Source: Hyphochytrium catenoides (lineage: Eukaryota > Protista > Hyphochytriomycota). From it: DNA of 39,325 nucleotides. Both the position numbers and the translations under genes were made by a program. Below the pieces are notes generated by a model. That model did not search any database. It was not told where the DNA came from and saw only the letters and a list, made by a program, of their open reading frames with translations. Within the stretch, counting starts at the first letter, position 1; each line of letters opens with the position of its first letter. Below are positions 5,211 to 26,100 of this stretch, piece after piece. The stretch covers positions 1 to 39,325 of the forward strand of contig FLMG01002842.1 of NCBI GenBank assembly GCA_900088475.1. Direction: 5' to 3'.

Positions 5211-8200
5211 TCATTCTTGTTCCCTTCCCCGCCTCTCCCATGTTCCCTTTGAACACCAGGCGTGGTGAAGGCGGTCAGGGAGGTCACAGAAGACGAACGA
5301 GCTGGTCTTGTCCCTTCAACCCCAGGCTGAGAAAAGCGAGTCAGAACTGGAGTTGTTGCTTCGCCAGAGGTCCGAATAGTATTCCTTGGTTCTGCAGCCT
5401 TTACTGGTGTCACACTTACCCGAGCGGCAGCAGATGCAGATGATACAACCGTTGATGTTGCCTTGGGACTTGCTTGCGGAGAAGAGCCTGGCAGAGGAGA
5501 CACAGACGACTCTTTGAGAGCAATTTTGGGAACAGTCGAGGCCCTGGGTAGAGTGGGAACTGCAGCAGGCCGTGGTATGGTAGAAGCACGAGAAGATGTA
5601 AGAGATTGAGCCGACACGATGGGTGTCGATGCAGAAGGACGACTGGTGGTCGCCGGAGGGTTAGTTGCCATGGTTGGTGATACGGTGGGCACAGGAACGC
5701 GGGCAAGAGGAAGATGAGAAGGAGAAGGTGAGCCTGCGGGAAGCTTGACTTGAGGCAGGGGGAGGTTTGGCGGGGGCGAGACTTTGTTAGATCTCTCACA
5801 TCTCTCTATCTGTCCTTTCAAGTCCTGGATCATTGTTTGCAGTGACGCACACTGCTGGAAATCCTTCTTCTGCAGAGCAGTATTCAGGGCGACCTCCGCT
5901 TGGGAGAGTTCTAGTCTTAGGTCTTCTAGAGTTCTTCTGTCCTCTGACTCTCCGTTTTTTCCTTTCCCTTCCTTCAGCTTCTCGTGCTCCGTCTCTTCGC
6001 TGTCCAAGAGCGCCTGGCGACCAGCTGTTAAGGTGTCCAGTTCACTCTGTAGCTCGGCGCAGAGCCTGAAGTCTTTCTTCTGGAGGGCCTCCCCTAGCCT
6101 TTTCTCTGTGCTCTTAATGTCTTGATCGAAGTCCGCCAATGTCCTCTTCTGCCTCCTCACAGCACGAATAACTTGTAGCTTGTCTTCGATGGCCTTTCTT
6201 AACGCCTGCTTGTTTTCTGCAGTGGCTGCCTCCAGAGCTCGTTCGAACGCTGAAATTTTGACGTCCAACTGCGTGGGAGACAAGGAGTCAAAGGTCTCAG
6301 GAGCCCGATAGCGGGCAACCCTTAGCTCGTCCAGCCCTTGCTGTATATCTTGGCAGAGAAAGAATTTTGAAGTGCGAATTGCAGCCTCGAGCGCCCTTTC
6401 CTGCTCGTTGATCTCTTCTTCAAGCTCCTCCGCTGTCCTTTTCTTCTTCTTTGCCTCTAACAGATTGTCAAGCTCCTTTTGGAGGGAGGTGCAGCGTAGG
6501 AACTGCTTCTCTCTCACTGCGTTCTGGAGCTCCTCCTCCTTTCCCTTGATCATCTGGTCCAGCGCCTCCCTTGTCACATCTTCAAATTCGTCCTTGGCTA
6601 ACCTTCTCCTTGTCAACCATCCCCGTGCTATTCGCTGTATAATTACTGCCTGCTTTCCAAGGCGGCGCCGTCTGGATAACTCTTGCCTAGCTACGTGTCG
6701 TCGATAGACGCTTTGTATCTGAACGGCACGTTTTCTGATCTTGAGAAAGCGGCCTCTAAGGAGACAAACGTATAAAAAAGACGCGAGGAGCTCTCTTGTC
6801 GCTTGTAGCTTCCGTGCCCGCAGCCTCGCTCTCCACCAGCACTGAATAGTATGACCTGCGAACTTCTTGCGAATTTGTACGAAAGACTCTAGTTTGGCGC
6901 TCATTTCATACCTAGTGAGTGGAGACGAGTTGTAGAAAGCAGCGGCACAAAGGTAGTTACGGCTGCGGTTAGTAGGACTACGAAGGGGGGGAGTAGGCTG
7001 CATCTGAGAAGAGGAGATTGATGATGCAGTCAAGCTAGGATGTGAGAAGAAGCTAAGCCTAGCCGTACCGCAGGAACACCTTGGAACTGCCTAGCTGCCA
7101 CTGATCCTTGCCTGCCTTCAAAACCTTTGAGATATGCTCAACTAGCTCCTCAATATCCTCCGCCTCAGGGTAAAGAACAGAAAAATGATGAAAGAAGTCG
7201 TCGTGCTCTTCCCGCAAGGCAAATCCCTGACGGCGGATCTTCACAGTCTCAAACATTCCTAGTTGTCACAGAGTGAAAGGACGTTGAAAAACTCGTCGCT
7301 GAAGCACGAGAGATACTTGGTTGCGAGGAAGCCAAAGATAAGCTAGGAAAGAAAGAGAGGAAGGACTACGGATAGCATATCTGACACAATGAAGACGGAA
7401 GATGCTGAGAGAGGGGAGTGGTCAATGGTCAGAGTTCTAGCATGTGGTAGTATGTTCATTGGTCGCCAGGGTAGAGGGCGGACGTGGACAAGAAGGTTGA
7501 CAAACTACGTTACCTGCATACTTCAGTTGCCTTAGAACCTCTTCATCCACAAACTTGTTTGGCAGCTTTTCTTGATTGGGCTTGATACACCTGAGAAAAA
7601 AGGGTACAAGGAGAAGTTGGCGAGATTCTGAGAAGGAGCTCGCGCAGGAGCCACAAGAAAAGGCAACGGAGGCAAGATCAGAATGCTCACGAGTGTAGAG
7701 GTTGACGCGAGGACTGCCAACAGGAGGTGAGAACAACAGAGACGACATAGCAACATTTGAATGATATATTGACTTCGTACCGGATGTAGTGCGGACGAGT
7801 ATTGGAAATGGTGGTCATTAGCTCCGACAGCTGGGTGCGGAACTGGTAGCCCACACTTTGTTCGCGTAGGTTGCGACTTGTCTTCCGCGCTGTTTCTCCT
7901 GTCTGAGACTGAGAGCCTATGAGGAGCGAAGGAAAGTTAAGCGATCGTATATGCCTTCTGTATCAGTGAATGGGCATCGCGGGATGGAAAGCAAATATGG
8001 GACGTGTGGAAGGAAGACGAAGCCTTGCTCTCTCTACGGTCCAGAGTCCCCACTCTGTGTCCTTCACAGGTAGTGCGGTTTAAACAGGTCTACCTGGGGG
8101 AGGACGGCGAACAGGAGTCTTGTCCTTGCTAGGCTCCTCCTCTGGCTTCCTACTCTTCTCAAAGACTGCTGCCAGCCACGTGCTGCTGCTACTCTGTATC

Positions 8201-11060
8201 AGCTTCTTCAGGTCCTCGTTCATCGTATCATTGTTCTTATCGTTCCAGCCAGTAACGTCGTAGTAGACTTCACCTGCGCCCAGAGATTCGTTAATACAGC
8301 GCCTGCAATAGATACTTCACACTCTGCCACATGATTGTGTCTCTCTCTCTCCCTTTACAATGCTAGGCGCACAACTCTCTGTCTATCGTCCTTCCTCTTT
8401 CCTTTTAGGTTCCGTCCTAAGCTGGACTGTCCTTAATGACACGTCTTGCCCATTATAAACGTCTACCCCTCCCCTGCTTCACTCTGATCCTTGGCTTATC
8501 ATCATGTTCCCGGCCCCACCTGCATAATGAACGATGCCAAACTCCCTATCGCCACGTATTTTGGGTTGCCTATAATACGAATGCTTCATGGTTCTGCCAT
8601 CCGCTCCGAAGGACGAGTTCAGCTGCGACAACAGCTTTTTGTTGGCCTCCTCTCCACTGAGTCTCCAGATATCGTCTAGTGCCATGAGAATGCCTGGAAC
8701 ATTATTTGGCTTCCCTTCAATGAGCTCTACACAGTCTGCATTGTCTTGGAAGGAAATAAAGGTCCAGTCGATGCCCTCACGCTTGTACTCATCTTGCTCC
8801 ACCTAATAGACAAAAAATGAAAGGTAAGAGGGAAGCTTGACCCTGAAGTAGTGGTAACATGCAAGATAACAGAGTGACAGCAGACTGCATGTGGAGGGCT
8901 TGAAGAAAAATGCTCTGAGCAAGAAGAGGCCACGAAAGAGCGAGCTAGACGTGTTCTGCACCTCAAAGATATGCCTATTGAAGTGCCTCTGGAGCTTCTC
9001 GTTCGCATAATTTATGCAGAGCTGCTCGAAAGTGTTCCACTCAAACTTCTCAAAGCCATAGATATCCAGCACACCGATAAACGGAGTAGAGGAAGAGGCT
9101 TTTCTCCTCCCAGTTTTGCAGTATATGCTTATTGTGGAGTTCAACTCAGAGACTAACCATTGGAAGAGCGAAGAATATAAAGCCTTGGCTGCAAAAGAGC
9201 GAGAGTTGTTGGGAGCGCAATAAGGTAAGTACATCGCTGAGAAGCCAAAGAATGCTACATTCTCCTGTCTTTGCTCTGGAGACAATGTCGGAACAGAACA
9301 TGGACATTTTTCAAGAGATTCCAAAATTTGTACTGCCTCACCAAGAGCATCACGCTTGTCTAAGGCTTGGTCTATCCTCTGCTCTTGAATGATCACTTTT
9401 CCTCCCACGAGCAGCTGTCTTTTGCACAATGCCGTCGTTAGATCAGACAGCTGAACGCCTAACAAATTAGCCACGAGCGAGAGTGAAGAGAGAGACTCTT
9501 CGTTTTCCGGAACACACTCGTCACGATCCAGAGTAAACTTGACGTCTCCCAAATGGAGAATTGCAGCCTATAGATAGCGGATGCGAGGAGACAAGGGCGA
9601 GAAAGCGTATTGAGGACTAGAGTGATAATATTATAAAGATAGTAGGACTTGCGCCAAACAGATCGGGCAATGACCGACAAGAGGTTATTGGAGGGCTCAC
9701 CAAGGTCCGAAACAGCTCTCTCCTACTCTCTCCAGAGATGCCAATCCTTCTCATGCACTCCTCCGTCGTTGCCAGTTCTTCCTTGTCATTCCTAAGATGT
9801 TTATAGGGCTTGAGTCGGGATAGCAGCAAGAAAGTTTGGCAAGAAAGGCCAGAATTGCAGGGAGGAAAGACAGAGCTGTGAAGAAATAGAAGAGGTGACA
9901 GCAACCCCGCCATTATGTTGCTGTGAAAGAAGCAACCTTGCGCACGCACCTTCCTTCCAGCGTATAACATTCGCTTTGGTTCAAATAGAAAAACTCATGG
10001 GGTGGCTTAAGGTGTAGCTCTGATCTTAGAGTCTGATCCTCTGTCGAGAGCAGCTACACGGAATGTTAAGAACCTTAGACTCCCTTACTATCCTTTAGAG
10101 CACCACAGGAGAGCACAAAAGAGCAAAAATGGCAATATACATCTTCCGAATGCAATAGTGACCCAAGAGAGCCAAAGACAAGCTCACCACGGCTTGCCAA
10201 GCCCAAGAGGAATAGTAAGGCTGCTGGGTCGCTCACCTGGTAGAATATATGAAAGTTTCTCTCGTCTGTTGTGGGCGCGACAATTCTCGTCTTCTCCAGC
10301 AGAAAGTTCGATATCTCTGCGCCGATAATCCTGCCGACATTGTCAAACTGAATCTCTATAAACTTTCCAAAGCGCGAAGAGTTATCATTGCGTAGAGTCT
10401 TCGCATTGCCGAAGGACTCTAGAAGAGGGTTTGCGTCAAGGACTTTCTGCTCCAGAGTGCTTAGTGTGTCGAAGAAATCCTGCATGTTGTTGCCCTTAAA
10501 AATTCCTCTCTGAGACCCTGGACTGCCTAAGCCCATGCCATGCTTGGGGATAGCAGAATGCGTTATCCTCGCCAGATATTGCATGATGATCTTCGTTGCC
10601 TCCGTCTTCCCTGCCCCACTTTCTCCACTGATAATGATTGTCTGGCTTGACGGGCCATCAGACGAAGCTTCCACCAGATCAGTGTAGGCCTTGTCAGCGA
10701 CAATGAAAAGATGTGGAGGCATTGCGCCTTGAGCTTTGCCTTGATACTGCAGCATCTTCGACTGTGAAGGTAATGGACAGGCAGCAAATATGAGCAAGGA
10801 GGAGAGTGAGCCACGCTTCATCTCACCAGTAGTATGGCAGCACTTACCTCTGTGTACAGTTCAGATATGGGAGCCGTCGTCTTATACGGGTTGATGGAGA
10901 TGAGAATCGGGCCAACAAACGTGTAAACGTCATCCCTGCTGTAGCGCGCTGATAGCGTGTTCAGGATGGCACCCTCAGAGAGATCATCTAGCTGCAAAAC
11001 ATTAGGGACGCCGGACTGCAGCTGCTGCTTCTTCTTTCGCTTGCGCCTGTCTTCCACCAT
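1..11060 (-). CDS. Myo29: Myosin heavy chain with CBS-domain tail (class XXIX/Myo29-like); multi-exon, 3' end outside the window, ATG at 11060 tentative
   Basis: Motor motifs in successive exons: [15 protein letters not shown]-loop GESGAGKTE, switch-1 [10 protein letters not shown], switch-2 [42 protein letters not shown]. One long exon (6911-982) carries IQ motifs, coiled-coil repeats and CBS modules. Further exons near 760-635 ([18 protein letters not shown]), 498-262 and 62-1 ([20 protein letters not shown]) splice in frame. Motor+IQ+many CBS is, from recalled literature, the stramenopile class-XXIX architecture. Confidence 0.92.
3850..3895. other. Assembly gap (46 N) inside the second CBS module
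   Basis: Run of Ns. Alignment to the sister modules implies about 28 codons (~84 nt) are missing, so the frame change across the gap is an artefact. Confidence 0.95.
5810..6545 (-). repeat. Five UvrB/C (UVR)-like helical-hairpin repeats in the myosin tail
   Basis: [26 protein letters not shown]; [26 protein letters not shown]; [26 protein letters not shown]; [26 protein letters not shown]; [26 protein letters not shown]. These resemble the UVR pattern LxxAxxxxxF/YExAxxLrDxIxxL. Confidence 0.65.
6600..6850 (-). other. IQ (light-chain binding) motifs of the myosin neck, about 3 copies
   Basis: [26 protein letters not shown] and [13 protein letters not shown] match IQxxxRGxxxR and follow the converter directly. 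Confidence 0.8.
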
Positions 11061-12476: not shown

Positions 12477-15400
12477 CTAGGTTGCTAACACTTCAGCTTC
12501 TTCAGGTCTTGTTACTGAAGCCAATTCCTTGCCCAGGTAGCCTTCAGCCATGGCCTCCATCTGGTTATCGTCAAGCTGGGCTCTACCTGTCTTGCCTTCA
12601 TGCTCTGCCGGCCCCTCCTTCTCTGGCCCTGGAACTGCCCTTATTGTGAGCTTGTCATTCTCTATTTCTCTCTCTTCCGGACCTTCCAGAATGCTTCTTC
12701 GAATGAGATTGAGTGACAGGGAAGAACCTTGCGTCATGGACGACCGGGAAGAACTCTTTCGTCGGCCAGCGTTGGCGGAATAGAGAGAGGAGAACGAGAG
12801 AGCTCTGCTTTTGGTCTCTCCCAAGCTCAGGAAAGGAGAGGATGAAGAGATTGAAGACCGCGAAGAAGAGGGACAAGCCTCTTCTTCTTGCGCTTGCTGT
12901 TGGACATAATCCATAAGGCTCTGGAAGGAGGAAGAGAACCCAACACCCTCGGCAAAGTGGAAGAGCTGGGAGCGGCTCAAGGTGTAAAGCTTTCCGGCAT
13001 CTAACTTAGGGTTGGAGAGGATGATTGGCACGAGCTTCTTGCCCTTATCCTCTGCAAAAGCGAGTTGGTCGTTGACTAGGACAGTGCGGGATGATTCTCT
13101 TGAGAGGATGACGATGAACAGTGTGCAGCTGAGGATATTGTCCTAAACAGGATCAGAACGAGAAAGAGAGAACCAGACATTAGGGCCAACCCTCCAATCG
13201 TATTAGGTAGCATGAGGTCATTGGCTAGGTACGGGCGGCTCGGACGAGGAGACATGTAAGGGATGAAAGTAAGTGTTGAGGAGAGATCATTGTAGTCAAT
13301 GGAAGAACGAGAGAGAGAATAAGACACAGACGTCGCTAGGTGGGAAAGAGTGTGCGAACCTTAGCAGCAACGATCCTCTCTTTCATGTCCGCTGTGGCGC
13401 TTCCCGAGTCAATGGTGCACAAGCAACCCTGCCGTCTGAACTCTTTCTGGAGCTGTCGAGCGAACTCTGGATGACAGTCTCCATGAGAGATGAAGATTGA
13501 AAGAGAACTGGGGACCGGAGACCCTGGACAGAAGACAGAGGATAGAATGAGAGTTGAGCTGGCAATGATTGAACTCTAACACTCCTCATTCTTAAAGCGC
13601 GTCTTCACGCTCTTCTCTGTCCCACTTCAGTGCTCTCATCCCTCCCTTGTCCTGTTCCCTTGCCCTCCCTTTCCTTCCTTGCTCACCTCCAGAAAGTAAC
13701 GTCATGTCCCCAGTGCCACAGGAAGAGATGCTACTTCGTCGTCGTACTCGGGGTTCTTCTATCTCGGATGATGCGTCGTCCTCCCAAAACTCCAGCCTGT
13801 GCTTCTCTATCTCATCTCTGAGACCATCCAGAAGAAGACAGAGACGATGGGCATACTCTTCCTCATCAATTGCCATTGCGCTGACTTTGTCCCCTCCTTC
13901 TTTCTCTCGATCTTTTGATGGAGGAGGAGATAAGAAGCAGGAGTCAAAGTGCACGATCTGTCGAGTGTAAAGATAGACTTGCAGCTCGTCATCTATGGTC
14001 ATCTTCTCTATAAGAGATGCAACGACCGGGACCCCTTCCTGTTTAGCGAAGGCCAGTTCTTTCATGCACCACTCGCTCTTTGCGTAGTCCTTACTGAGGA
14101 TACAGAGGACCACGGACGCGTTCTGGATGCCCCTGGCAATCTCCTCTCTCCAAACAGCTCCAGCTCCTGCGAGATAATGGAGATGAAGTACCCGGAAGTT
14201 AGACGTGAGGGACGGAAGGCCTCCCATCTGTGTGTTTCTGTCTGTCTGTCTGTCTGTCTCTCTTTCTGAATAAGCCAACCTTCTCAACCGTCTGGCTTAG
14301 TATCTCTCACCTATGCCAGAAGGGTCCATACTATCCATCCAGGTTGTTATGTTGTTATCTTCTAGGCTCTTGCGAACCTAGCACAGCTCCGTTAGCAATA
14401 TACCCAGATAGATAATGGCAGAATAAGCTTTTCCTTTGCCCTAAAAGCTGAGCGGGCCTTGCTACTCATGAGAGCAGCGAAAAGAAGACGATCTGCAGAC
14501 ACGGAAAGCTGTATACCAGCAACCACGGAATGCAAGAGATGGAGAGAGGAAGCAAAAAGATAGCGTCGTACCTTTAACGCAAACTCTCTTTGTGAATGAG
14601 CGTAGCTAATCATAACGTCCCTCGCTCCTGCCTCCTTCTTCACGGCGAACTGGAGCTCAGTGCTCGTCGTGCAGTCGATGGGGCGCTTGCCTTCTTTGTT
14701 TGTTCGCATCAGATCTCCGCCTGCGAGAGGAGAGCAGGATATGACAACCGGAAGAAAGCCATTGAGGGGCCAGGACGACAGCCCCAAAGAGAAAGTTCAC
14801 AGTCATATATGGGCATGGCCCATAACAAAGCCGAAAAGCTTAAGGAAGAAACAAGGAGAAAGGTTGAGACCGAGGAAGGGATATGTACTAGCAGAACACT
14901 GAGCCGCTACGAGGAATGACGTGAAGTACCAACTTGGCAAGCTCTTCCTCTTGTCAAGAAAGAGACAGCGCAATGCTATTCCTACCATATTTGATGAACG
15001 AGAGAGCGGTGGATCTGTTCTCCAATTTGAGTGCGATGTGCAACGCTGTATCTCCACTCTCCTCTATTGTGGCGTGAATGTCAGCCCCGCTTGCCAGCAA
15101 CTGAGACACAACGGCCGGAAAGATGTCATCAACCTGCAGAGAGAGCCCGAAAACGCAAAAGCACAACAATGGGAAAGGGAAGAATATTAACAAATTAGCC
15201 GGGAACAGAGACGGAGGAGAGAGAGAGCGGAAAGAGAGAGAGAAAGGGCGACAGAAGACGGGGAGAAAACAGAGAACGAGAAAGAGAGGAGAAGGGTGTG
15301 ATGAGGAACCTCAAAAGGGCTTGAGATAGAGAGAGAAGATGATGGAGACAGACAATGGGGGAGGGGAGGAAGACTAACTGCTAGACAGAGAGAGAGGACG

Positions 15401-18400
15401 GACCTCTGCGGCAAGAAGAAGAGGTGTGCGGCCTTGATTGTCTCTGATGTTGGGATTGGCGCCAGCACTGAGGAGAAGATCCATAGCTGAGGCGTGACTA
15501 TGACGGGATGCCCTGTAGACGAAGCGAGACCGACAAGCAAGCAAGCGAGAGAGAGAGTTGGAGGCATAGAGAAAAAAGAGGGAAAAGCGAATGAGTGAGT
15601 GAGAGGGCTGTTTAAGAAGTATAAGAATCTATGAAAGAAAAAGCAGAAAGCAGAGACCCCGACAGAGAGAGATGCTAGAAAACTAAGGAGATCCGAAGAG
15701 CAACGCGGGACATCTAGAGAGGCACACATAGAGAGTAAGAGAAACACAAGGAAGATAGCCAGCACTCAAGAACGTAGGCAGACATGGACATGTGTAGGCA
15801 GTGCATGTCTACCAGTGAAGTGGTGTCTTTCCAAAGACATCCCTCGCGTTGACATCCGCCCCTGCTTTGATAAGAGTCTCTATAGCATCCAGAGCACCCA
15901 CTATGGCAGCCCAATGAAGAGGAGTACGAAGAGAAGCAGCAGGGAACTGGTCTCCCAGAGTGTCGGGGGAGAGACCGAAAGAGAGAATTCTCTCTATTCT
16001 TTTCTTATCATTCTCTGCTGCAGCTGTGTGCAAGGGTGAGAGAGCTACATCTCCTCCCCACTCTTCCAGCATGCGGTAGAGGGCCTTCTGCTCTCGAAGA
16101 TATGCTCTCTGGAGCACTGTGAGGCGCATGTACGAGCCAGCGCGAGGGATGTAAAGAAGGTTCGCACCGTGACACAGGAGGACCTATAGAAGAGCCAGAG
16201 AAGCAGAGATATTTGAGCCGAGTAGAGAAAAAGGAGGAGAGGCCAGGAGGTGCAAACAAGACGAAATTCAGCAGAGAGAGAGGGAGAAGCAAAGGAGAGG
16301 ACCGTAAGAATGAGTTTATCTCCGCCTCCATCATGACGAGTCAGCAGACTAAGAAGTAGCTGAAATGGGGATGGAAAGGAGTAGAGAAGGAAGAAACACT
16401 GAAGAAAGAGCGAAAAGTAGTCTCTAACTCTGTTGAAGGGGAGAGATGGACAGTCTTGGACAAGCAAACGCTGTTGGGAGGGAGAAAGGCAGAGTGGCTC
16501 TTACCTTGAGGACCTGTACGTTGTCTACCCAGTAGAGGGGAGGGACACAGCTCTCAGCTGTTATTCCCTTGGAGAGAATGTTAACATCTGCCTGGTGGTC
16601 GATTAGCCACTTTACGGCAGCGACTTGACCGTTGGCCGCCGCTACATGCAAAGCGCTGAGGTAGAGCAGAGAAAGTGAGCACAACCACTCGCTAATGGAC
16701 CAAGAGAGAGAAAGAGGACCATGAGCGTTGAAGAACTTTTAAGGCAATAGGACGGGGCCATGGAACGAGAGACCAAGATATCATTATCTCTGTTCTTAGG
16801 ATTTACCTTGCCAGGACATCGCTCTGACAGATTTCTGCTGATCCATGGTATCTGATGGCTTTGGAGCGAGTCCAGCCAAAGAAGAAGAGATAATGGATGC
16901 ACCAGATATAGAAGTTCCGCAGACTTAAGCCGCTGGCAATAGAGGGAGCGAGCGAGATAGGAAGAAACGGGGAACAGAAGGTGAGAAGGGTGAGGAAGAG
17001 AGAAAGCTTAGCACGCAATGCCGTCATACTGTCATTCTGCTGTGCTTCTCTATCTGATCTTACCTTCCCACGACCTCCTTGACGCTTTCTTTGTAATCAC
17101 CTCTCTCTCTCTCCCTCTGTTTCGCTCTTCCCACCTCTGCTCTCCCTTACTCCCTCCTTTTTTCTTCTCTTTTTCAAGCTTTGGGGTTCTTGTCTTCTTC
17201 TTCCTGGCCCCATCTTCTCATTGAACCATTGTTATCAACCGTCAAGCAAGATCCTCTCCTCTCCCCTCACCTGTGCTCCGCCCTGTCTAGCATGTTGACC
17301 TCAAAACCATGCTGCAGAAGGGTCGCCATCACCTCCACGTGTCCATAGGCCGCGGCAGCGTGCAGAGGGTTCAAGTTACTGATCCCAAGGTAACCCCAAA
17401 GAGAAGGAGGAGAGCGGTACATCCGTACAATAAAGTCTGCTCCAAACTCCTTTCTACATAGTTTGAAAGAGACGGAGAAGTCAGAGAGTAAGAGAGGCAA
17501 AAAAGCCCAAAGGGAGAGAGGAAGAGAGGAAAGAGACAGAGGGCAGAAGGGAAGGCGAGCAAAGTTTTAAGGAGACAGAGAGACGGAAGTGTCTGCACAA
17601 GAGAGGGGCCAGGTGTAAACGTTGGGAACGCGAGACATATAGCAGATGAAAGGAAACTGACTGATAATCCAGGATCACTGCCAGCAACAGGCGCGAGTGA
17701 GAGTAGTGAGAGAGAATGAACCCGGAGGAGCAGAATGAGAGAGATTGAAACAAGGAGAAACGAGAGGGAGCTAGAGAAGAGAGGGTGACACAAGGGATAG
17801 GGAGAAATGGAGGAGAAAAGCCCGAGGTTGAGAAAGGCAAAGAGAAAGGGCAAAGAGAAAGGGAGAGAGAGGGAGGGAAAGAGAAAAACGAGAATTGCTG
17901 AGTACGACCTTCCGCGTTCTACCAGCTTTGTAACCTCCTCTCCCTGCCCCAAGCTGGCAGCATCCACCAATTTTCTCCTAAACTCTTTCTTAGCCTGATA
18001 GCGCTGTAAAAAGCAGCTCCAGCGAGAAAGACAGACTGGAAACTTGGAGCTGAGCAAATAAAATTAAGAAAAGAGAAGGAAAGAGATGGACATTAGAGAA
18101 GGCTTCCTAGTCATCGTGAAGAGAGAGAGAGACAAGTGAGAAAGACAGAAAAGACAATAGCAAAGGGGAAGGGGCCATGAAGGCATCCCACACCGTTAAC
18201 ACTCAGTTCTAGGAAGTAGAAGAGAAGGAGGCGCAGACTCGTATCGCCAGAGAGTTGGAAGGGGATCTCGCCACGGTGGAAGAGAAGTCAACAGTCTAAG
18301 AAACACTACACTCGGCAGAGAAGGAAGTGAGAAGCTAGATTAGAGTTCTTTTATTCTCTCTGGCTCACCGGACGCCACTCTCGGCGACTTTGAAGCCAAA

Positions 18401-20403
18401 CGTGCAATAGTGAAGCTCCAGATGGTGTCTATAAAGGTTGAAGAGGTTGATCTGCTTCCATGCCAAGCAATAGATTATAACGTTGATGAGCTGCACGCTG
18501 AGCTCCAGGTAGGCGCCAGTGTTGAAGCAAGTTGCAAGGCCATAGTTCATAAACGGCCCAGCCACGGCAGTGACCGTCCAGAAGACGATGAAGATGATCT
18601 CTCCAATGACAAATATCTCGCAGGTCTACAAGGAGCGAAAGGGGAAACATCAGTTGAGGCGACACAGATGCCAAGGCAGCGAGAGACAAAGTGGACTATC
18701 AGAGAGACTTTGTAGAAAGAGTCAAAGAAGAGGATGTGAAAGGATGAGCAAAGAATAACGAAAAGAGTAGAACGCAGAGAGAAGAAAAATAAATAAGACG
18801 AGAAAGAGACACAAGGCAAGAGGAAGGAGGATTTGCCGTTTATCAACCACATGGCGTACTGGAGTTTTCAACGAAGTGAGAGGGAGGAGGTGGCAAGAAG
18901 AGAGAGCATTAGGATAGAGATTGAAGTGCCAAACGGGTGAGAATCCCGGGTCCAGTGCTCTCTCTCTCTCTCTCTCTCTCTGTGTATGTCTCTCTCTCTC
19001 TCTCTGTGTGTATGTCTCTCTCTCTCTTTCTCTTTTTCTCTCTCTAATTCACTCTCTCACCTCCAAGAATGTCGTCCGAATCAACCTCCTGGAGGTCCAA
19101 TCAACAGAGAATAGGCCAAAGATAGGCGGTCCAATGGCCGCTAAGCCCAGCACTATATTGGGTGCCAAGAAATAGTTGAAGAGGAGCCACAGGTTGATGG
19201 TCGCGGCACATCCTGTGTCTAGAAGCTTCGCTCTGTATTGAGAGGACTGCTGCTGGATGAGAGAGACAGCTAGCAGGTTAAGAGAGGAGAGAAACGCGGT
19301 TGAGAGGAGCAGACGCTTGGCGAAGAAAGAGTTGCCAATTCCCTTCCTCAAACCCCTGAAAGGAAACGAGAGAGGAAGAGAGGACGCCCTTGTGTCTCCA
19401 TGTCTCGTGTCTCCCTCCTGTGCTGCAGCTTGGCTGCGAGGCTCCTCTGCAGGTGCAAGACCGCATTCTGGATCCACTTCCTCACAGGCAGGTAGGGTTC
19501 CTATTGTTCCTGACCTAGTAAACCAATAACAGGACAGAAAGGAAGGAGAGAACAACAGCAAGAGATAGGAAGAATGAAGGAAGTTAGGGCAATAGATAAG
19601 CTTCGGATGAGAGAGAGAGAGAGAAGGAGGACTTGACCAAGGAGAAGGAAAGACAGAGAGAGTGTGAGAGGATTATTAACGACAGAGGAGAAGATGGAAA
19701 GAGGAAAGTAAGAAAGCAACAGAGAGGGAGCGCGGACCTGGTATCTGCGGTTGGCTGTTGGCCTCTCCTTAGAAGGAAGCTTTCTCCAAAGAAACTTTGC
19801 TTCTGCCTCCATCCTTTCTTTCTCTCTTTGACGGAAGGAAGAGGAGATAGAGGACCAGCTTCTCGATGTCTAGGGGATGTTAAGGAGGGAAGAACGGCCC
19901 GCTTTTCTTTCTCTCGCCCTGAACTAATCTTTCCTGCAGCCTAGCGGTCCAGACAGAAGGAAGAGAGTCCATGTCGTCAGAGAGGGTTAGGGTATATAAA
20001 GGTCTCAGATAAGAGAGAGAGAGAGAGACAGATGCACACAGAAAGAGCGAGAGAGTCTGTTCGAGTGGAACGGTTAACAAGGAACAAGAGAAGAACACCA
20101 GGCACGCCTTTTCTCCTACGTACCTCCGTGTAGCATTTAGCAGTGAGCTTTGCCCTTGCAGCGGTCTCAGTAGAGAGAGAAACACGAGGCGGGGTGGGAC
20201 GAGGGAGGGGTGGATGCCTTTCTTCTCTTCCTCCGATAGGACCTCCAGATTGTGACTTTGGACTTAGCTGAGATCGCAGTCTTTCCAGCAGAGGGTCAGG
20301 GAGAGGTAAGCTGTCCGTCTTCGCGCTGCTCTTTGTCCTAGAAAAGGATATAAGACCAGACGAACAAAGAGCAGAGAGAGAAAGAGAGTGAGTGAGTGAT
20401 TGA

Positions 20404-20457
<54 letters not shown>

Positions 20458-21751
20458 AGAATGTAGACAGAAAGAAATGAGAATGGCGGCCCGGAGGGCA
20501 CATTCTGCTATTTGTCAAGATTCAGTTGGGATTTATTGGGGACATTAGAAGGTACTGAGAGAGAGAGAGAGAGTGCTTGAAGAGTGAGGTCATAGAGATT
20601 GAGAAGAGACGATGAAAAAGGCATTCAGAACCAGATTTTGTTTAAACGGAGAGAGAGAGAGAGGGAGAGAATAAGAAGAATGCGAAGTTTAAGGAGACAA
20701 GAAAATAAAGGACTTAGAAAGGCATTTTGTCTTATAGTCTTTGGTAGACAAAGGCTGAGAAGATGGAGTGAGGAGATGGAAACGGCGAAGAGAGAAACAG
20801 AAAGGCATCTAGCCATAGAAACTGCTATAGGCAGAGAGAGAGAACAGATGGAATGAGGACAAGAGCGGCAAATGAATTTAATTATAGAGAAATGGACAGA
20901 AAGTGAGATAGAGATCAACATAGAGGGACAGACAGAGAGGACAAAATGCTGTTGAGAGAGAAGAGACACCATGGGCAAGGAGAAGGAAAAAGCAGGCCGA
21001 CAGAGAATTGGCGCCATCAGGAGCGTGCGATAGAAGTGAAGCTTGAACGGTCTTACCCTGGGCCAGCAGTAATGGAAGGCGCAGCGTTCACCCGCTTACT
21101 CTCGTGCTCTTCCTGCTTACTTCTTTCTTCAGCCCGTGTTCCCCGCCCATTCTCCTCTTTGACTCTCAGTTTAATGGGGATCAGCTGCGGTACTGTGGGG
21201 CTAAGAGGAGGCTCAGAAGAAGCGATGGGAGAGAGAACAGAAGAGGAAGAGAGATGAGACGGAGAAACTACTGAATGAGGAGGAGGAAGCCCCCAGATAG
21301 TTGAAAGTGCAGAGGGAGGAGAAGAGAGAGAGAGGGGAGAAACATGAGGCCTAGCCTCATTCCTCTGGTTATCTTCGAGCGTCCTCTCCGCAGGGCTGAG
21401 AGGGCTCAGATTGAGAAAGGGAGACAGAGGTGAGGACACAACCGCCCCTTGCTCATCCTGTCTCTCACTCTGCCTGGCCATAGCACCTTCCCGGTCCTCT
21501 ACTCCTAAAGGGAAGGAGAACGGATTCGCAGAGAGAGAGGCAGCGGACTCACTCCATCTGCGGTAAGAAGTAGCATTGACTTCCTCCTCTCCTTCTCCTT
21601 CTCTCTGATGCCTTCTCTCTCGCTTTCTCCCTTCTCTCTCCTCTTCATCATGCAGCAGTCGATGACAGAAGGCGCCTGTCCGCGCTCTATCTCCGCTACT
21701 TCGAGGATGGGGTGCGCTCTTTATCAGTTGAGAGCGTATCTTCTTCGTCAT
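12477..21751 (-). CDS. Transmembrane ankyrin-repeat protein with two C-terminal TIR domains (about 4TM-ANK-TIR-TIR), about 17 exons
   Basis: Manual GT-AG splicing gives one continuous frame. Exons include 21751-21057, 20337-20124, 19940-19738, 19514-19061 and 18625-18369 (the last two hold the hydrophobic helices), 18049-17909, 17453-17271 ([14 protein letters not shown]), ANK exons at ~16930-14985 ([59 protein letters not shown]), TIR1 exons at ~14720-13687, TIR2 exons 13523-13360 and 13142-12477 (TAG stop). The 5' exons are the least certain. Confidence 0.85.
12900..13500 (-). other. TIR domain 2, degenerate (Gln at the catalytic Glu position)
   Basis: [88 protein letters not shown]. Most of it is read in a frame missing from the ORF track. 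The Gln codon is at 13065-13067. Confidence 0.8.
13940..14620 (-). other. TIR domain 1 (TIR_2-like), catalytic Glu present
   Basis: [79 protein letters not shown]; the Glu codon is at 14057-14059. Confidence 0.9.
18958..19045. repeat. Compound (CT)n microsatellite at the 5' end of an intron of the ANK-TIR gene
   Basis: Seen directly; it reads (GA)n on the sense strand just after the donor at 19060. Confidence 0.9.
20404..20456. repeat. (GT)n(GA)n compound microsatellite
   Basis: Seen directly in the sequence. Confidence 0.95.
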
Positions 21752-22143
21752 TCTCTTCTCATAGTCTCTCCTTCTCTCCTCCTTCCAGGCTTTCTCTTCC
21801 TGGAAGCTCTCCTACGTCTACAAAGGCGATGGCCAAATCAAGCTATGTTGCTTGCCTCTCTGCCGCTCTTTTTCTCTATCTGCAGTTTAGCGAGCATGCT
21901 CCTTGATTTTTGTCTGGCTCAGTCACTCTTTCTTCTCTGTTTTGGGCTTGAGATCGAGGAGAAGAGGTTGCAAAGAGACAAAAGCTATGAGAATAAGAAG
22001 TGAGTTGAATCGTATGGTAAGCAGGTACAAGAGAGAGAAAGAGAGAGAGAGAGTTAGGAGGGAGAGCCGTGGGCTGATCCTCTGGATTCGATAGGCCCAA
22101 CTCTTCCTGTGCGGTGCCTTACACCTATCCCTGTGCCTTCTAC

Positions 22144-22170
22144 CTCTCTCTCTCTTTTGCTCTCTCTCTT

Positions 22171-22223
<53 letters not shown>

Positions 22224-22441: not shown

Positions 22442-22483
<42 letters not shown>
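22144..22483. repeat. (CT)n tract at 22144-22222 and (GA)n tract at 22446-22483 (complementary pair)
   Basis: Seen directly; followed by a 2-nt N gap. Confidence 0.9.
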
Positions 22484-23123
22484 NNAGTGATGTAATGCTT
22501 CCACCTTCTTGCCTTTTTATGTCCTTAGACAATGTAACGGACCGTGAAACCTTCATTCTTGTAAAGAAACAACGTTAATTTCAATTTCTATAGATCGTAA
22601 GTAAGGAGAGCTTTCATAGTTTCAGAAAGAGGGAAGCTTTCGTTTGCTACCTTGTGCCTCTCTGGTCTGTGAGCCATCCTGCAGCTCCAGGGCTGCGCTC
22701 TGTCTGTCTCTCCCCCTCTCTTTTCTCTCTCTCTCCCTCTTGTTGTTCCTTCCTCCATCGCTGGTCCAGCCTTTCGCTCTTTCCTTACCAACGATGGCTC
22801 CAATCGTTCCCACTCTGATGTACTTTCCTCAGATTTCTGACTATAACGCTCCTCCTCTGCTGCTGCTGCAGCCTGTGCACTTACAGCAGATGGATGATCG
22901 CTGGGTGGTTGAGTTAAGAAGACGGAGGGATGACGAGTACGGCAGACGAGCCATAGAGGATGACCAGAGCCCAAGATTTGGCAATTTGAGAAGAGGGCGC
23001 AAGGAAGATGGCGGTAAATGAAGAGGACAGGACCATCAGAGAAGAGAACAGGACAACCCTATCTATGGTTGAGGGTGGAACAAAGTCATTGATTAGTTGT
23101 TCTTATTTCTGGCTATCGCGCTC

Positions 23124-26100
23124 TCACATAACCTCATAGGCCGGTCCTCCCCCTCCCTCTGGCACTGTCCAGTTGATATACTCCTTGGGCATTTTGATCG
23201 AGCAGCATTTGCAGTGGACGCAGTTCTGAGCATTGATGACAAGCTGAGGCTGGCTCCCATCCTCCGGTGATGTGTACTCATAAACCCTAAGAGAATTGTT
23301 AGATTAGAGAAGAGGACGGCTCTGTGAGCGACATCGATAGGGAGGGAAAGTGGATCAAAAGCAAGGAAGACGGAAAAGGGTTGACTGAGTATGAGCACTA
23401 ATAAGCAGAGAGGAAAGGCAAAACAAGATCTCTTTCGTCCTCCCCACTCCTCTTTCTCTCGTGTGGCTTACTTTGCTGGACAGAATCTTTGCTCCGGACC
23501 GGCATAGACAGGGAAAGACTCATTCGAAGGCACCTCCTCCAGCCCTTGCTTCAGGCGGAGATGGGCAGGTTGGTCGTGGTTGTGATTGGTGCCGCTGCGG
23601 CCAAGATTGGTCAGCAAGTCGAAGGTGACCTTTCCGTCGGGCTTTGGATAGTCGATGGGCTTGAAATCCGAAGCTTTGCCTGTCTTCTCACTGTCTGTCT
23701 TGGTGTTCGCAATCGTCCATGGTTCCTAAGGGAGTCAAAGGAGACAGGCGGAGGTAGATCAATAAAGGGACGCTGTGGCGGTCAATGAGACAGATATCAG
23801 TTCTGATAATGCGAGACGTCTTAGAGAAAAAGTGAGGTCGTTAACGGGGCAACAAGGATACTAGGGCAACGAAAACAGAGAGAAATCGCTCAATATTCGT
23901 TTGCCTCTTTTCTCTTACCTTGCCCCTGAGGATGAAAGACTCAAGAGCCGCATATGCGAGGCCCGGAACTAGACCCCAGTGGAACGCGGCATGCGTGTTC
24001 CGGACCCGCTTTAACTCATCAAAGACCCACGACTTTTTCAAGTCGTGCTCGTACCTTCAAACAAGGGAAAGTGAGTGCACCCAGGACACAGGGAGACGGC
24101 GACAGGAGCAGTTGGAAAAGCGCAAAATTGGGTTGCCAGTAGACGAGGAGTATGTGCAGCCGGGAAACCGGATGAGGTTTCAAGAAAGTTAACTCTGCCT
24201 TGCAGTTAGAAAGAAAGAGGAAGACCTACTGCTCTACTTCCACCGCATTCTCCGAGAGATCTAGCTCTCCAGTGCTGGCCACAGGTTCCTTCCCTGACCC
24301 CTGAAGGGCAGCGAAAACAGCTTCTGCGGCGACCATCCCCGACTTCATAGCCGTGTGGCTTCCCTAGTTTGGCAAGACACAGGAGTAAAGGTTAGCGACA
24401 GAGTTATCGAGTCCTGGAAAACATTTCAAAAGCGGTCTTATGAAGAAACATCTTTGTTCCTATACTGCCCATGAGCCCAGCCGATGGGAATAGTATGAGA
24501 GTCATAGCAATTTGGTGCGAGACACAGAGCGAGAGCAAGGTACGGGGAGGGAGATAGCGAAAAGTTGAAAGTAAGGGTGGTCTTCCCACCTTGATCTTTA
24601 CTGAGTTCAAAAAGCCAGCGGAGCACCCGATGAGGGCTCCACCGGGGAAGGTTAGCTTAGGGATCGCATGGTATCCGCCTTCGTTGAGCACTCGAGCGCC
24701 ATAAGAAATGCAGTTGCCCCCTAGAAGACGAAATGACCACGAATGGCACAGATGAGTGAACATTGACTCGTCAGGGGCTAACACTTAGAAGTCTATGGCC
24801 AGGAGTAATTTGCCGGATGTCCCATTGCGTGCAATGAGAGAGAGAGACAGCTAGACTCTCCGATGGGCACTCACCTTCCAGATGCTTTTTGATATCTGGA
24901 TGCGTCTTCCACCTCTGGAACTCTTCATAAGGAGAGAGATAAGGGTTCTCATAGTCCAGCCCCACGACATAGCCGATCAGCACTAGATTGGGCTTCATAT
25001 GGTAGAGGAAAGAGCCTCCAAAGTTCTTGTCAAAGAGAGAGTTCTGCAGTGGCCAGCCCAAACTATGCTGAACAAAGCCTATTATGGATTAGGAAACAAG
25101 ATGAGTAGAATAGAATCAGACCCAGAGCAGAATGGGAGTGAGGTGATCTGATGCTCGGTCAATTGCACTTGTTACCTGGCTTGATTTTATCCTCTGGAAC
25201 CTCCCAAACCTGCCACCGAGCACAGTTGAGAGGACGAATGGGTAAGAGGCAGGCCGAAAGTCTTAGGGGTCGGGCAGAGCGGAGAAGGAATGCGTTTGGT
25301 GTGTAAGGTCGTAGTGCTAAGCCCAGGTTGGAGCACTTAAGAGGAAGATACTTAGGGTGGTGAAAGGGTTTGAATGGAATGGCTTGCTTTCATCCTGCTG
25401 TTCTCTTACCTCCTTGACACCTAGTCCGTACGTCTGAGGCTGGCGACCTTCTCTAAGGTTGAATTTTCGCATCAGTTCCTCGCTGCAAGAACCTCTGGCA
25501 CCCTCTCCAAACAAAGTTTGTCTTGCGCGAAGCTCCATTCCCCGCGCGAATGTCGACTTAGGCTTTCCATCCTTGCCTACACCTACATCTCTTGTGGCGA
25601 TGCCGAGCACACTTCCATCCTCTCTGTATAATACCTGGCAGAAAAGTCAAACGCTCCTTAGAACCTCCCTCGCAGTTATTCTGCCACGTTGGACCCCCCT
25701 TTCGCCCTCCCTCCCGGCTTTCTCAATTCTCGTTACCTCTTCGCTCTTCTCCTCTATCCAGCCCAAACCATTAGTAAAAGCGCTTGCGCGTCACTATCTG
25801 TAACTGGCTTCGAATGTACGCTTCACTCTTTTCTTGTCATCGTTTCGTCGCTGATCATAACCCGATACTCGATCTTCTCGCCGAACGCTTACAGAGCAAG
25901 CCAAGCTCACCTCAGATGCTGAAAAGCCTGGATAGATCTCCACACCAAGCTCTTCCGCCTGTTCTCCCAACCACCGGACGAGTTTGCCAAGACTGATAAC
26001 ATAATTGCCTTGATTGTGCTGAAGAAGTAGCGACGAAGGAATAACAAGTAGATGGTTAATCTTCCCACCATAAAGAGTAAACGTTGTCCGACAGGACAGA

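What the first reader, a model, noticed from the sequence alone, without database searches (positions are those of the whole stretch)
12477..21751. Hidden 17-exon membrane receptor-like protein: about 4TM - ankyrin array - TIR - TIR
Seen: the exons splice in frame into about four hydrophobic helices, about 8 ankyrin repeats and two TIR domains. Established: TIR domains act as NAD+-cleaving signal or death enzymes (SARM1, plant TNLs, Thoeris ThsB) or as scaffolds (TLRs), and ankyrin arrays are ligand/protein-binding sensors. Inference: this is a multi-pass membrane sensor that is neither a TLR nor an NLR, possibly for protist innate immunity or regulated cell death. From memory (not checked), similar TM-ANK-TIR proteins occur as uncharacterised oomycete hypotheticals, so the family may be widespread in stramenopiles yet functionally undescribed.
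Basis: partly seen in the sequence, partly recalled or inferred. Interest (0 to 1): 0.78.

Follow-up and report, generated by a model that had tools for sequence, protein, structure and literature searches.

The report
Membrane-anchored ankyrin–TIR–TIR protein gene
This is a real, apparently intact, intron-rich gene for a four-pass membrane protein carrying about ten ankyrin repeats, one enzyme-type TIR domain and one catalytically dead TIR domain. It is a further member of a little-studied family found across water moulds, so it is of moderate interest and not a new kind of protein.

Summary
On the minus strand, 12 exons (19480/19514 down to 12477) join through GT-AG introns into one open frame. 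They encode a four-helix membrane domain, about ten ankyrin repeats, a complete TIR with the catalytic glutamate (SEWCMKE) and a second TIR with glutamine at that position.

All 12 exons are backed by colinear homology to 900-1600 aa oomycete proteins. A profile built from relatives' N-termini picks out exactly the two membrane exons in the whole window (E 2e-18 and 2e-7) and runs straight across their splice junction. The membrane and ankyrin-TIR parts are therefore one gene.

They do splice in frame (1479 aa). No RNA run was listed.

The family is known. A 2022 review notes uncharacterised oomycete ankyrin-TIR proteins. A 2026 preprint shows that the first TIR of a Phytophthora member makes cADPR in E. 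coli, and it lists Gln/Ile at the catalytic position of the second TIRs.

This scan already reported several paralogues elsewhere in this genome. Verdict: a new member of a known, poorly understood family. The "receptor" reading is weak because each outer loop is under 20 residues.

The parts
21057..21751 (-). Candidate first coding exon A (ATG 21751; Ser/Pro/Arg/Glu-rich, low complexity). Unverified.
   Evidence: Open frame with donor CCAGG|GTAAGA. It splices in frame either to X1 or directly to exon B at 19514. No Pfam hit and no match to relatives' N-termini. Codon score is only weakly coding.
20124..20337 (-). Candidate exon X1 (unverified, low complexity).
   Evidence: Has an AG acceptor after a pyrimidine tract and donor ACGGAG|GTACGT. 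It is in frame in the 17-exon chain. No homology support.
19738..19869 (-). Candidate exon X2 (unverified). It contains an alternative start ATG at 19812.
   Evidence: In frame in the 17-exon chain. A model starting at ATG 19812 is also open (1157 aa).
19061..19514 (-). Exon B: cytoplasmic NSFFxxRL motif, TM1, outer loop 1 with a conserved Cys, and TM2. The acceptor is at 19514 (phase 2) or 19480 (phase 0).
   Evidence: The family N-terminal profile HMM matches at E 2e-18 (profile 29-166), from about 19435 to the donor. Upstream of 19514 the sequence is clearly non-coding by codon score. This frame has no in-frame ATG, so an upstream exon is required.
18369..18625 (-). Exon C: TM3, outer loop 2 with a conserved Cys, TM4, and a basic juxtamembrane stretch.
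   Evidence: Profile HMM E 1.8e-7 (profile 167-234), directly continuing exon B's match. The conserved motif RTxxLxxCE spans the B/C junction.
17909..18016 (-). Exon D: linker and capping ankyrin repeat.
   Evidence: The profile HMM match (259-294, E 0.037) starts and ends at the exon borders. In frame with C and E.
17271..17453 (-). Exon E: ankyrin repeat.
   Evidence: Pfam Ank E 2.6e-6. tblastn hits from many relatives.
16807..16932 (-). Probable or optional exon F (126 nt, frame-neutral). It lies where most relatives carry an aromatic-rich insert of 40-50 aa between two ankyrin repeats.
   Evidence: It has the best donor in the gene (CAAG|GTAAAT), is open in the required phase, and fits the length and position of the family insert. 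There is no sequence similarity to that insert. Skipping it also gives a perfect ankyrin junction.
16505..16655 (-). Exon G: ankyrin repeat.
   Evidence: Pfam Ank E 2.1e-6. tblastn hits.
15813..16183 (-). Exon H: ankyrin repeats.
   Evidence: Pfam Ank E 3.2e-13. tblastn up to 4e-32.
15404..15512 (-). Exon I: ankyrin repeat.
   Evidence: Pfam Ank E 2.1e-6. The junction completes TPLHW|A in ankyrin register.
14986..15133 (-). Exon J: ankyrin repeat.
   Evidence: Pfam Ank_4 E 2.3e-4. tblastn hits.
14572..14720 (-). Exon L: last ankyrin repeat and the start of TIR1 (first strand and first helix).
   Evidence: TIR_2 profile 1-27. tblastn up to 2e-20, 65-73% identity.
14311..14377 (-). 67-nt exon: TIR1 segment with [11 protein letters not shown].
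   Evidence: tblastn alignments run through it (14377 onward, up to 7e-43). In frame.
13687..14166 (-). Exon M: TIR1 core with the catalytic-type Glu (SEWCMKE), the conserved post-TIR helix [14 protein letters not shown], and a linker.
   Evidence: TIR_2 E 5.9e-11. 353 library hits. Cys and Glu are invariant in 16 sequences. It aligns to plant TIR 7xoz over the S.WC..EL motif.
13360..13523 (-). Exon N: first half of TIR2.
   Evidence: TIR_2 profile 1-44. tblastn up to 8e-12.
12477..13142 (-). Exon O: second half of TIR2 with Gln at the catalytic position (VNDQLAFAE), a low-complexity tail, and the stop codon at 12479-12477.
   Evidence: TIR_2 profile 48-107. tblastn up to 6e-25. In alignment A1 the position is Gln in 14 of 16 sequences and Thr in 2.

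Best explanation
One intact gene encodes a tetraspan membrane anchor with both ends in the cytoplasm. This is followed by an ankyrin solenoid of about ten repeats, an enzyme-competent TIR domain, and a pseudo-enzyme TIR in which the catalytic Glu is replaced by Gln.

Shown here: the architecture, the intact frame, the motifs, and membership of the oomycete 4TM-ankyrin-TIR-TIR family.

Inferred, step by step:
- TIR1 converts NAD+ into cADPR at a membrane surface, as the first TIR of a Phytophthora member does in E. coli.
- TIR2 does not catalyse. It serves as a built-in partner surface for TIR1, either activating or restraining it, because TIR enzymes need TIR-TIR contacts to form an active site.
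- The ankyrin array binds a partner or holds the TIRs inactive, by analogy with the ARM domain of SARM1.
- The four-helix domain is an anchor or clustering device and not a ligand-binding receptor.
For: - Exon-by-exon Pfam hits.
- A single 1048-aa frame over 13 GT-AG exons.
- Four hydropathy peaks confined to exons B and C.
- Colinear tblastn of about 50 relatives over exons E to O.
- Relatives carry 3-4 N-terminal hydrophobic helices.
- The family N-terminal profile finds only exons B, C and D among 1225 open segments of the window, in order and across the B/C junction.
- Family Pfam content is Ank plus two TIR_2 stretches.
- TIR1 Cys and Glu are invariant. TIR2 Gln is conserved.
- AF2 of a relative's N-terminus gives four long helices, pLDDT 81.5.
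- AF2 of a relative's TIR tandem matches RPP1, RUN1, SARM1, SPARTA and MyD88 TIRs.
- The preprint 10.64898/2026.04.20.719644 reports Glu-dependent cADPR production by a family TIR1. Its tables list Gln or Ile at the catalytic position of the second TIRs.
- By eye, that tested TIR is about 59% identical to the window's TIR1, including [22 protein letters not shown] and SEWC.KEL.
Against: - No transcript evidence: no RNA run was listed.
- The start codon and 5' exons are unresolved.
- The enzyme activity was shown for a relative's isolated TIR in E. coli, not for this protein or in its own cell.
- The roles proposed for TIR2, the ankyrin array and the membrane domain are inference only.
- The tandem model's inter-domain geometry is uncertain (pTM 0.51).
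- This is one of several paralogues in the genome, so it could be weakly expressed or not expressed.
Confidence: 0.6

Rival explanations
1. The protein is a NAD+-depleting death effector and not a messenger synthase. Once triggered, TIR1 drains NAD+ and kills or arrests the cell, as SARM1 and some bacterial TIR effectors do. cADPR would then be a by-product.
For: TIR1 has the catalytic Glu. SARM1 TIRs are among the structural matches. SARM1 also makes cADPR while depleting NAD+ (my own knowledge, and noted in the preprint text seen).
Against: The preprint classifies the family TIR as a cADPR producer that activates a cADPR-sensing Thoeris system. No NAD+ depletion data exist for this family.
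Confidence: 0.2
2. The locus is an unexpressed or decaying paralogue of an expanded family, even though its frame looks intact.
For: Several paralogues are noted in this genome. No RNA run was listed. The N-terminal exons are low complexity and unsupported.
Against: There are no frameshifts or internal stops over 12 homology-supported exons. All family-invariant residues are kept in the TM domain, TIR1 and TIR2.
Confidence: 0.1
3. Both TIRs act only as non-enzymatic adaptors, in the classical TLR/MyD88 style, recruiting partners by TIR-TIR contacts.
For: TIR2 lacks the catalytic Glu. MyD88 TIR is among the fold matches.
Against: TIR1 keeps the invariant S.WC.KE motif across the whole family. 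A family TIR1 is enzymatically active in a Glu-dependent way.
Confidence: 0.07
4. It is an ion channel, as suggested by the database names 'TRP-CC family protein' given to several relatives.
For: Names. The four-helix domain weakly resembles tetraspan scaffold and channel proteins (connexin, TTYH, MS4A, tetraspanin; Z 9-12).
Against: No ion-transport or TRP Pfam domain is found in any exon or relative. There are four helices, not six, and no pore loop. The Z values are below the stated noise bar for helical bundles (about 13), and Foldseek finds nothing at E<0.3. The name most likely comes from the ankyrin repeats.
Confidence: 0.05
5. The membrane exons and the ankyrin-TIR exons belong to two adjacent genes that were wrongly joined.
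For: No transcript data. The C-to-D junction uses a weak acceptor context (..GCTGGAG|).
Against: The relatives' N-terminal profile runs colinearly through B, C and D into the ankyrin part. Relatives have the same order in one protein. There is no stop and no ATG at the join.
Confidence: 0.03

Closest known systems
Oomycete 4TM-ankyrin-TIR-TIR proteins. Examples: Achlya hypogyna OQR96094.1, Pythium insidiosum GLE04463.1, Albugo candida CCI44432.1, Saprolegnia diclina XP_008615575.1. Includes the Phytophthora protein whose first TIR was tested in preprint 10.64898/2026.04.20.719644.
   Same: - Same domain order and similar length.
- Homologous membrane domain with the same motifs (NSFFxxRL, two loop Cys, RTxxLxxCE).
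- TIR1 has S.WC.KE; TIR2 has D-Q-L-A-F-A-E.
- Conserved helix LLLDGxRDEIE after TIR1.
- 40-70% identity per exon.
   Different: - Intron-rich here (at least 12 introns), whereas the closest relative found is encoded without introns on its contig.
- On a 117-column tree the window protein falls outside both oomycete subgroups, unresolved.
- The N-terminus before TM1 is unrelated.
SARM1 (animal ARM-SAM-SAM-TIR NADase)
   Same: - An alpha-solenoid repeat region precedes a Glu-dependent TIR that makes cADPR.
- Membrane-associated.
- The TIR fold matches.
   Different: - No SAM domains.
- Ankyrin repeats, not ARM repeats.
- A true four-pass anchor, not a targeting peptide.
- An extra dead TIR.
- No detectable sequence relationship outside the TIR. 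This is an analogy, not membership.
Plant paired TIRs (RPS4/RRS1) and TNL resistosome TIRs
   Same: - One Glu-bearing TIR is paired with a TIR that lacks the Glu.
- TIR1 aligns to a plant TIR over S.WC..EL.
- RPP1, RRS1, RPS4 and RUN1 are among the best fold matches.
   Different: - Here the two TIRs lie in one chain.
- No NB-ARC or LRR.
- Membrane-anchored.
- The family's tested product is canonical cADPR, not the plant-type products.
Toll-like receptors
   Same: A membrane protein with a cytoplasmic TIR.
   Different: - No LRR ectodomain.
- Four passes, not one.
- Outer loops under 20 residues.
- Ankyrin repeats and tandem TIRs in the cytoplasm.
Bacterial TIR defence proteins (Thoeris ThsB, TIR-TM effectors)
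   Same: TIR_2/ThsB_TIR profile similarity (ThsB_TIR E 0.0057; relatives up to 7.7e-9) and the Glu-dependent NAD+ chemistry.
   Different: Eukaryotic multi-exon gene; there is no partner ThsA-type effector nearby; ankyrin and tetraspan context.

Membership tests
Oomycete-type 4TM-ankyrin-TIR-TIR family | N-terminal four-helix membrane domain homologous to the family's. | tested here: met
   A profile of 30 relatives' N-termini hits exon B at E 2e-18 and exon C at E 1.8e-7, colinearly. The conserved motifs are present. Four hydropathy peaks.
Oomycete-type 4TM-ankyrin-TIR-TIR family | Ankyrin array between the membrane domain and the TIRs. | tested here: met
   Pfam Ank in five exons. Colinear tblastn of relatives.
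Oomycete-type 4TM-ankyrin-TIR-TIR family | First TIR with the invariant S.WC.KE motif; second TIR with Gln in D-Q-L-A-F-A-E. | tested here: met
   Alignments A2 and A1. Motif survey of 60 relatives.
Oomycete-type 4TM-ankyrin-TIR-TIR family | All parts are in one transcript or protein. | tested here: inconclusive
   The frame is continuous and the order matches relatives, but no RNA run was listed.
Catalytic TIR NAD+ cyclase/hydrolase | Catalytic glutamate in the helix after the third strand (S.WC..E context). | tested here: met
   TIR1 has SEWCMKE, aligned to plant TIR 7xoz SSWCLDE. The Glu is invariant in the family. TIR2 does not meet this feature (Gln).
Catalytic TIR NAD+ cyclase/hydrolase | Measured NAD+ turnover or a cADPR product. 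| not testable with these tools
   Shown only for a Phytophthora relative's TIR1 expressed in E. coli (preprint Table S4 row 122).
Toll-like receptor | Extracellular LRR ligand-binding domain and a single membrane pass. | tested here: not met
   No LRR in any exon or relative. Four helices and outer loops of about 19 and 15 residues.
NLR / TNL | Central NB-ARC or NACHT nucleotide-binding domain. | tested here: not met
   No such Pfam hit in the exons or in eight full-length relatives.
TRP channel (the database name of some relatives) | Six-helix ion-transport domain with a pore loop. | tested here: not met
   No ion-transport Pfam hit. The relative's model has four long helices. No channel match above noise.
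SARM1 | ARM repeats plus tandem SAM oligomerisation domains before the TIR. | tested here: not met
   Only Ank and TIR families are found. The resemblance is functional logic only.

The most novel reading that the evidence does not exclude
The tetraspan domain is more than an anchor. It would oligomerise, or sense membrane disturbance or clustering, for example at a site of viral or bacterial attack, and so bring the TIR1/TIR2 pairs together to switch on local cADPR synthesis. That would make this family a self-contained membrane-damage or infection sensor that couples directly to calcium signalling or cell death in oomycete-lineage protists. Such an innate-immune design would have no counterpart among TLRs, NLRs or SARM1.
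Probability: 0.12. Interest if true: 0.7.

Novelty: new member of a known kind. Interest (0 to 1): 0.35.

Why it matters
TIR enzymes link immunity and cell death in bacteria, plants and animals. Protist TIR biology is almost unexplored. This family is present in every oomycete order sampled, many of them crop and fish pathogens, and as several copies in this intron-rich relative. It joins a cADPR-making TIR to a conserved dead TIR, an ankyrin array and a private four-helix membrane domain.

Knowing that the design predates the oomycete radiation, and which residues are fixed, gives concrete handles for experiments. The fixed residues are the two loop cysteines, RTxxLxxCE, S.WC.KE, D-Q-L-A-F-A-E and the post-TIR helix.

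This particular locus adds a paralogue and an exon map, not a new principle.

Tried and rejected
- Pfam on the membrane exons and the 5' candidates: nothing.
- Fold of the membrane domain, modelled on relative P0012:1-265. Foldseek against PDB gave no match at E<0.3. VIA-align wide gave tetraspanin, synaptophysin, TTYH and connexin at Z 9-12, below the stated helical noise bar. The ESM Atlas shape search gave TM below 0.4. I do not claim a known fold.
- Exon F: a profile of the relatives' insert did not hit it. It stays 'probable' on splice sites, phase, length and position only.
- Codon-usage log-odds, trained on this window, separated introns from exon B but could not decide among the 5' candidates.
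- The bacterial promoter/terminator scan is irrelevant for a eukaryotic gene and was ignored.
- A candidate exon at 14806-15063 was rejected, because the J-to-L junction completes an ankyrin repeat exactly.
- I looked for the preprint's tested protein among the fetched relatives by a short motif. It was not in the set, so the ~59% identity figure is a by-eye count, not a tool result.
- The joined spliced protein was not sent to any search or fold tool. Exons were searched one by one by reference. The joined translation was made only inside local scripts, to check frame, stops and hydropathy. For the same reason the window's own TIRs and membrane domain were not folded; relatives were folded as proxies.
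- The big representative search was used because no exon frame exceeds 252 aa. The length-limited word search could therefore not reach relatives of 900 aa or more.
Full report
**What is in the sequence**

The window is eukaryotic, about 50% G+C, and its introns are CT-rich on the coding strand. In 12477-21811 the minus strand carries a string of open segments with recognisable domain pieces.

Pfam scans of single segments, each given by reference, gave the following.
- Ankyrin repeats in 17270-17566, 16427-16738, 15812-16183 (Ank E 3e-13), 15377-15628 and 14957-15310.
- A first TIR split between 14395-14796 (TIR_2 profile 1-27) and 13595-14296 (profile 34-104, E 5.9e-11; PF01582 E 1.2e-6).
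- A second TIR split between 13339-13575 (profile 1-44) and 12480-13142 (profile 48-107).

The two TIR2 halves are individually sub-threshold (E about 0.09). They abut in profile coordinates, and relatives' second TIRs hit them at up to 8e-12 and 6e-25.

**Exon map**

Reading the minus strand, I placed GT-AG junctions that keep the ankyrin and TIR registers. The resulting exons are:

| Exon | Coordinates |
|---|---|
| B | to 19061 |
| C | 18625-18369 |
| D | 18016-17909 |
| E | 17453-17271 |
| G | 16655-16505 |
| H | 16183-15813 |
| I | 15512-15404 |
| J | 15133-14986 |
| L | 14720-14572 |
| 67-nt exon | 14377-14311 |
| M | 14166-13687 |
| N | 13523-13360 |
| O | 13142-12480, stop at 12479-12477 |

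A local script confirmed one frame of 1048 residues with a single terminal stop and introns of 144-615 nt. Several junctions are pinned by biology:
- TPLHW|A (H/I);
- LLLAAE|VDD (I/J);
- IKYG|GDL (J/L);
- ALK|[15 protein letters not shown] (L to the 67-nt exon);
- the TIR2 halves (N/O).

Some donors are weak at position +3 (GTCGTA, GTCCGT, GTTCGC), yet homology verifies them. This genome therefore tolerates such donors.

**Are the membrane exons part of the same gene?**

Hydropathy gives four peaks, all in exons B and C.

No exon frame exceeds 252 aa, so the length-limited word search could not reach full-length relatives. I therefore used the one representative search, with exon M as query. 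It returned 353 hits at E<1e-3, and the best hits are mostly 900-1600 aa.

About 50 of these relatives align colinearly to exons E through O by tblastn. Most carry 3-4 hydrophobic helices near their N-terminus.

I built a profile HMM from 30 relatives' N-terminal regions and searched it against all 1225 open segments of the whole window on both strands. The hits were:
- exon B at E 2e-18 (profile 29-166);
- exon C at E 1.8e-7 (profile 167-234);
- exon D at E 0.037 (profile 259-294);
- nothing else below 0.3.

The match is colinear and continuous across the B/C splice site. It begins and ends at exon D's borders. The family motifs NSFFxxRL, a Cys in each outer loop, RTxxLxxCE (which spans the B/C junction) and F..R.H are all present in the window. 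The membrane, ankyrin and TIR parts are therefore one gene by comparative evidence.

**The 5' end and exon F**

Exon B's frame has no ATG, so at least one upstream coding exon must exist.
- A, 21751-21057;
- X1, 20337-20124;
- X2, 19869-19738;
- B starting at 19480;
- F, 16932-16807.

It is in frame, 1479 aa, with 16 GT-AG introns.

Two other in-frame solutions exist: A spliced directly to 19514, and a start at ATG 19812. The candidates are low-complexity, have no Pfam or family match, and my codon score cannot choose among them.

Exon F is frame-neutral (126 nt), has the best donor in the gene, and sits where most relatives have an aromatic-rich insert of 40-50 residues. It shows no sequence similarity to that insert. 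Skipping it also yields a perfect ankyrin junction, and some relatives lack the insert. No RNA run was listed, so these points stay open.

**What family it is**

The named relatives are all oomycetes: Achlya, Thraustotheca, Saprolegnia, Aphanomyces, Albugo, Lagenidium, Pythium, Globisporangium, Phytophthora, Plasmopara, Peronospora, Hyaloperonospora, Bremia and Peronosclerospora.

There are 241 clusters at E<=1e-5 for the TIR tandem of the closest relative. Species carry several paralogues each. Database names include 'TIR domain-containing protein', 'Ankyrin-like' and 'TRP-CC family protein'.

Eight full-length members show only Ank plus TIR_2 in Pfam; TIR_2 matches two stretches in six of them and one in two.

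On a 117-column tree the window protein sits unresolved outside the two oomycete subgroups. That fits the earlier notes that this organism is a close relative of oomycetes; I did not test that identity.

**Catalytic residues**

In TIR1 the Cys and Glu of S.WC.KE are invariant across 16 aligned sequences, and the motif is present in most of 60 relatives. The window reads SEWCMKE, which aligns to SSWCLDE of a solved plant TIR annotated as an ADP-ribosyl cyclase (7xoz).

In TIR2 the equivalent position, in D-Q-L-A-F-A-E, is Gln in 14 of 16 sequences and Thr in 2. The window has Gln.

A helix after TIR1 (LLLDGxRDEIExxR) is nearly invariant.

**Literature**

Lapin et al. [quoted passage not shown]

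The preprint 10.64898/2026.04.20.719644 reports cADPR-producing TIRs in unicellular eukaryotes, including Phytophthora nicotianae. Its Table S4 row 122 is the first TIR (residues 816-972, Glu 892) of a 1179-aa protein. The printed sequence shares [22 protein letters not shown] and SEWC.KEL with the window's TIR1. I count about 59% identity by eye.

The same tables list the second TIRs of oomycete ankyrin proteins with Gln, or Ile, at the catalytic position. In that paper Glu-to-Gln changes abolish activity. The natural Gln therefore argues that TIR2 is inert.

**Structure proxies**

The window's domains are split over exons, so I folded relatives.

The N-terminus of P0012 (residues 1-265) gives four long helices at pLDDT 81.5. 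It has no convincing known fold:
- Foldseek finds nothing at E<0.3;
- VIA-align finds tetraspan scaffolds at Z 9-12, under the noise bar for helical bundles;
- the Atlas search finds nothing.

The TIR1-TIR2 tandem of P0015 folds as two TIR-like domains (pLDDT 78.9). Its relative orientation is uncertain (pTM 0.51). It matches RPP1, RRS1, RPS4, RUN1, SARM1, SPARTA, TcpB and MyD88 TIRs.

**Topology and mechanism**

Basic residues cluster before TM1, between TM2 and TM3, and after TM4. The loops TM1-2 and TM3-4 are about 19 and 15 residues, with 2 and 0 basic residues and one conserved Cys each (read). By the positive-inside rule both termini are cytoplasmic. That suits an NAD+-using TIR, and it leaves almost nothing outside the membrane.

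I therefore read the membrane domain as an anchor or clustering module, not as a ligand receptor.

The most likely working model is a membrane-tethered cADPR synthase. TIR1 needs a TIR-TIR contact to be active. TIR2 supplies or blocks that contact. The ankyrin solenoid binds a partner or auto-inhibits, as the ARM domain does in SARM1. Only the chemistry of a relative's TIR1 is experimentally shown; the rest is inference.

**Verdict**

The family is already in databases and in two papers, and this scan has already reported several paralogues of the same design elsewhere in this genome. It is a new member of a known, poorly understood kind.

Noticed in passing
window 16807-16932 (-): A frame-neutral 126-nt candidate exon lies inside the E-G intron. 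Both including it and skipping it keep the frame and the ankyrin register. Relatives exist both with and without an insert at this spot, so this may be an alternatively spliced cassette.
   Followed up: partly
window 961-7033 (-), N run 3850-3895: Two very long open frames (958 and 1072 aa), separated by a 46-N gap, encode many CBS domains (Pfam CBS, 9 stretches, E 1e-95). The upstream ORF begins with a basic, coiled-coil-like region. Probably one giant CBS-repeat protein.
   Followed up: partly
window 8803-10821 (-): Myosin motor-domain exons (Myosin_head E 2e-64), directly downstream of the TIR gene on the same strand.
   Followed up: partly
window 24404-26937 (-): Exons of an ETF-ubiquinone oxidoreductase gene (ETFQO_UQ-bd E 9e-23 at 24771-25061). 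This is the next recognisable gene upstream of the TIR gene.
   Followed up: partly
window 30665-33010 (+): An intron-less 781-aa hybrid histidine kinase: PAS, PAS_4, HisKA, HATPase_c and a receiver domain. Another note of this scan (s1-342033) covers its PAS domain.
   Followed up: partly
window 36985-37476 (+): A protein kinase exon (Pkinase E 4e-20). By eye it has a Wee1/Myt1-like look.
   Followed up: no
window 18958-19045, 20374-20456, 22144-22223, 22446-22483: (CT)n/(GA)n microsatellites lie inside introns and upstream of the gene. One abuts a 2-N assembly gap at 22484-22485. Introns are strongly pyrimidine-rich on the coding strand, which shows as positive GC and AT skew on the plus strand.
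   Followed up: no
P0001 (Lagenidium giganteum DAZ99117.1, 2664 aa): This relative contains two complete units of the architecture in tandem, with two sets of membrane helices, ankyrin and TIR-TIR hits. It is either a fused gene model of adjacent paralogues or a true duplication.
   Followed up: no
L001 969-3842 (Logan contig of SRR27418475): The relative most identical in TIR1 among the full-length hits (P0012; 58%, 56% in the alignment) is encoded without introns on its contig. That contrasts with at least 12 introns here. The contig could be a transcript assembly or come from an intron-poor oomycete.
   Followed up: no
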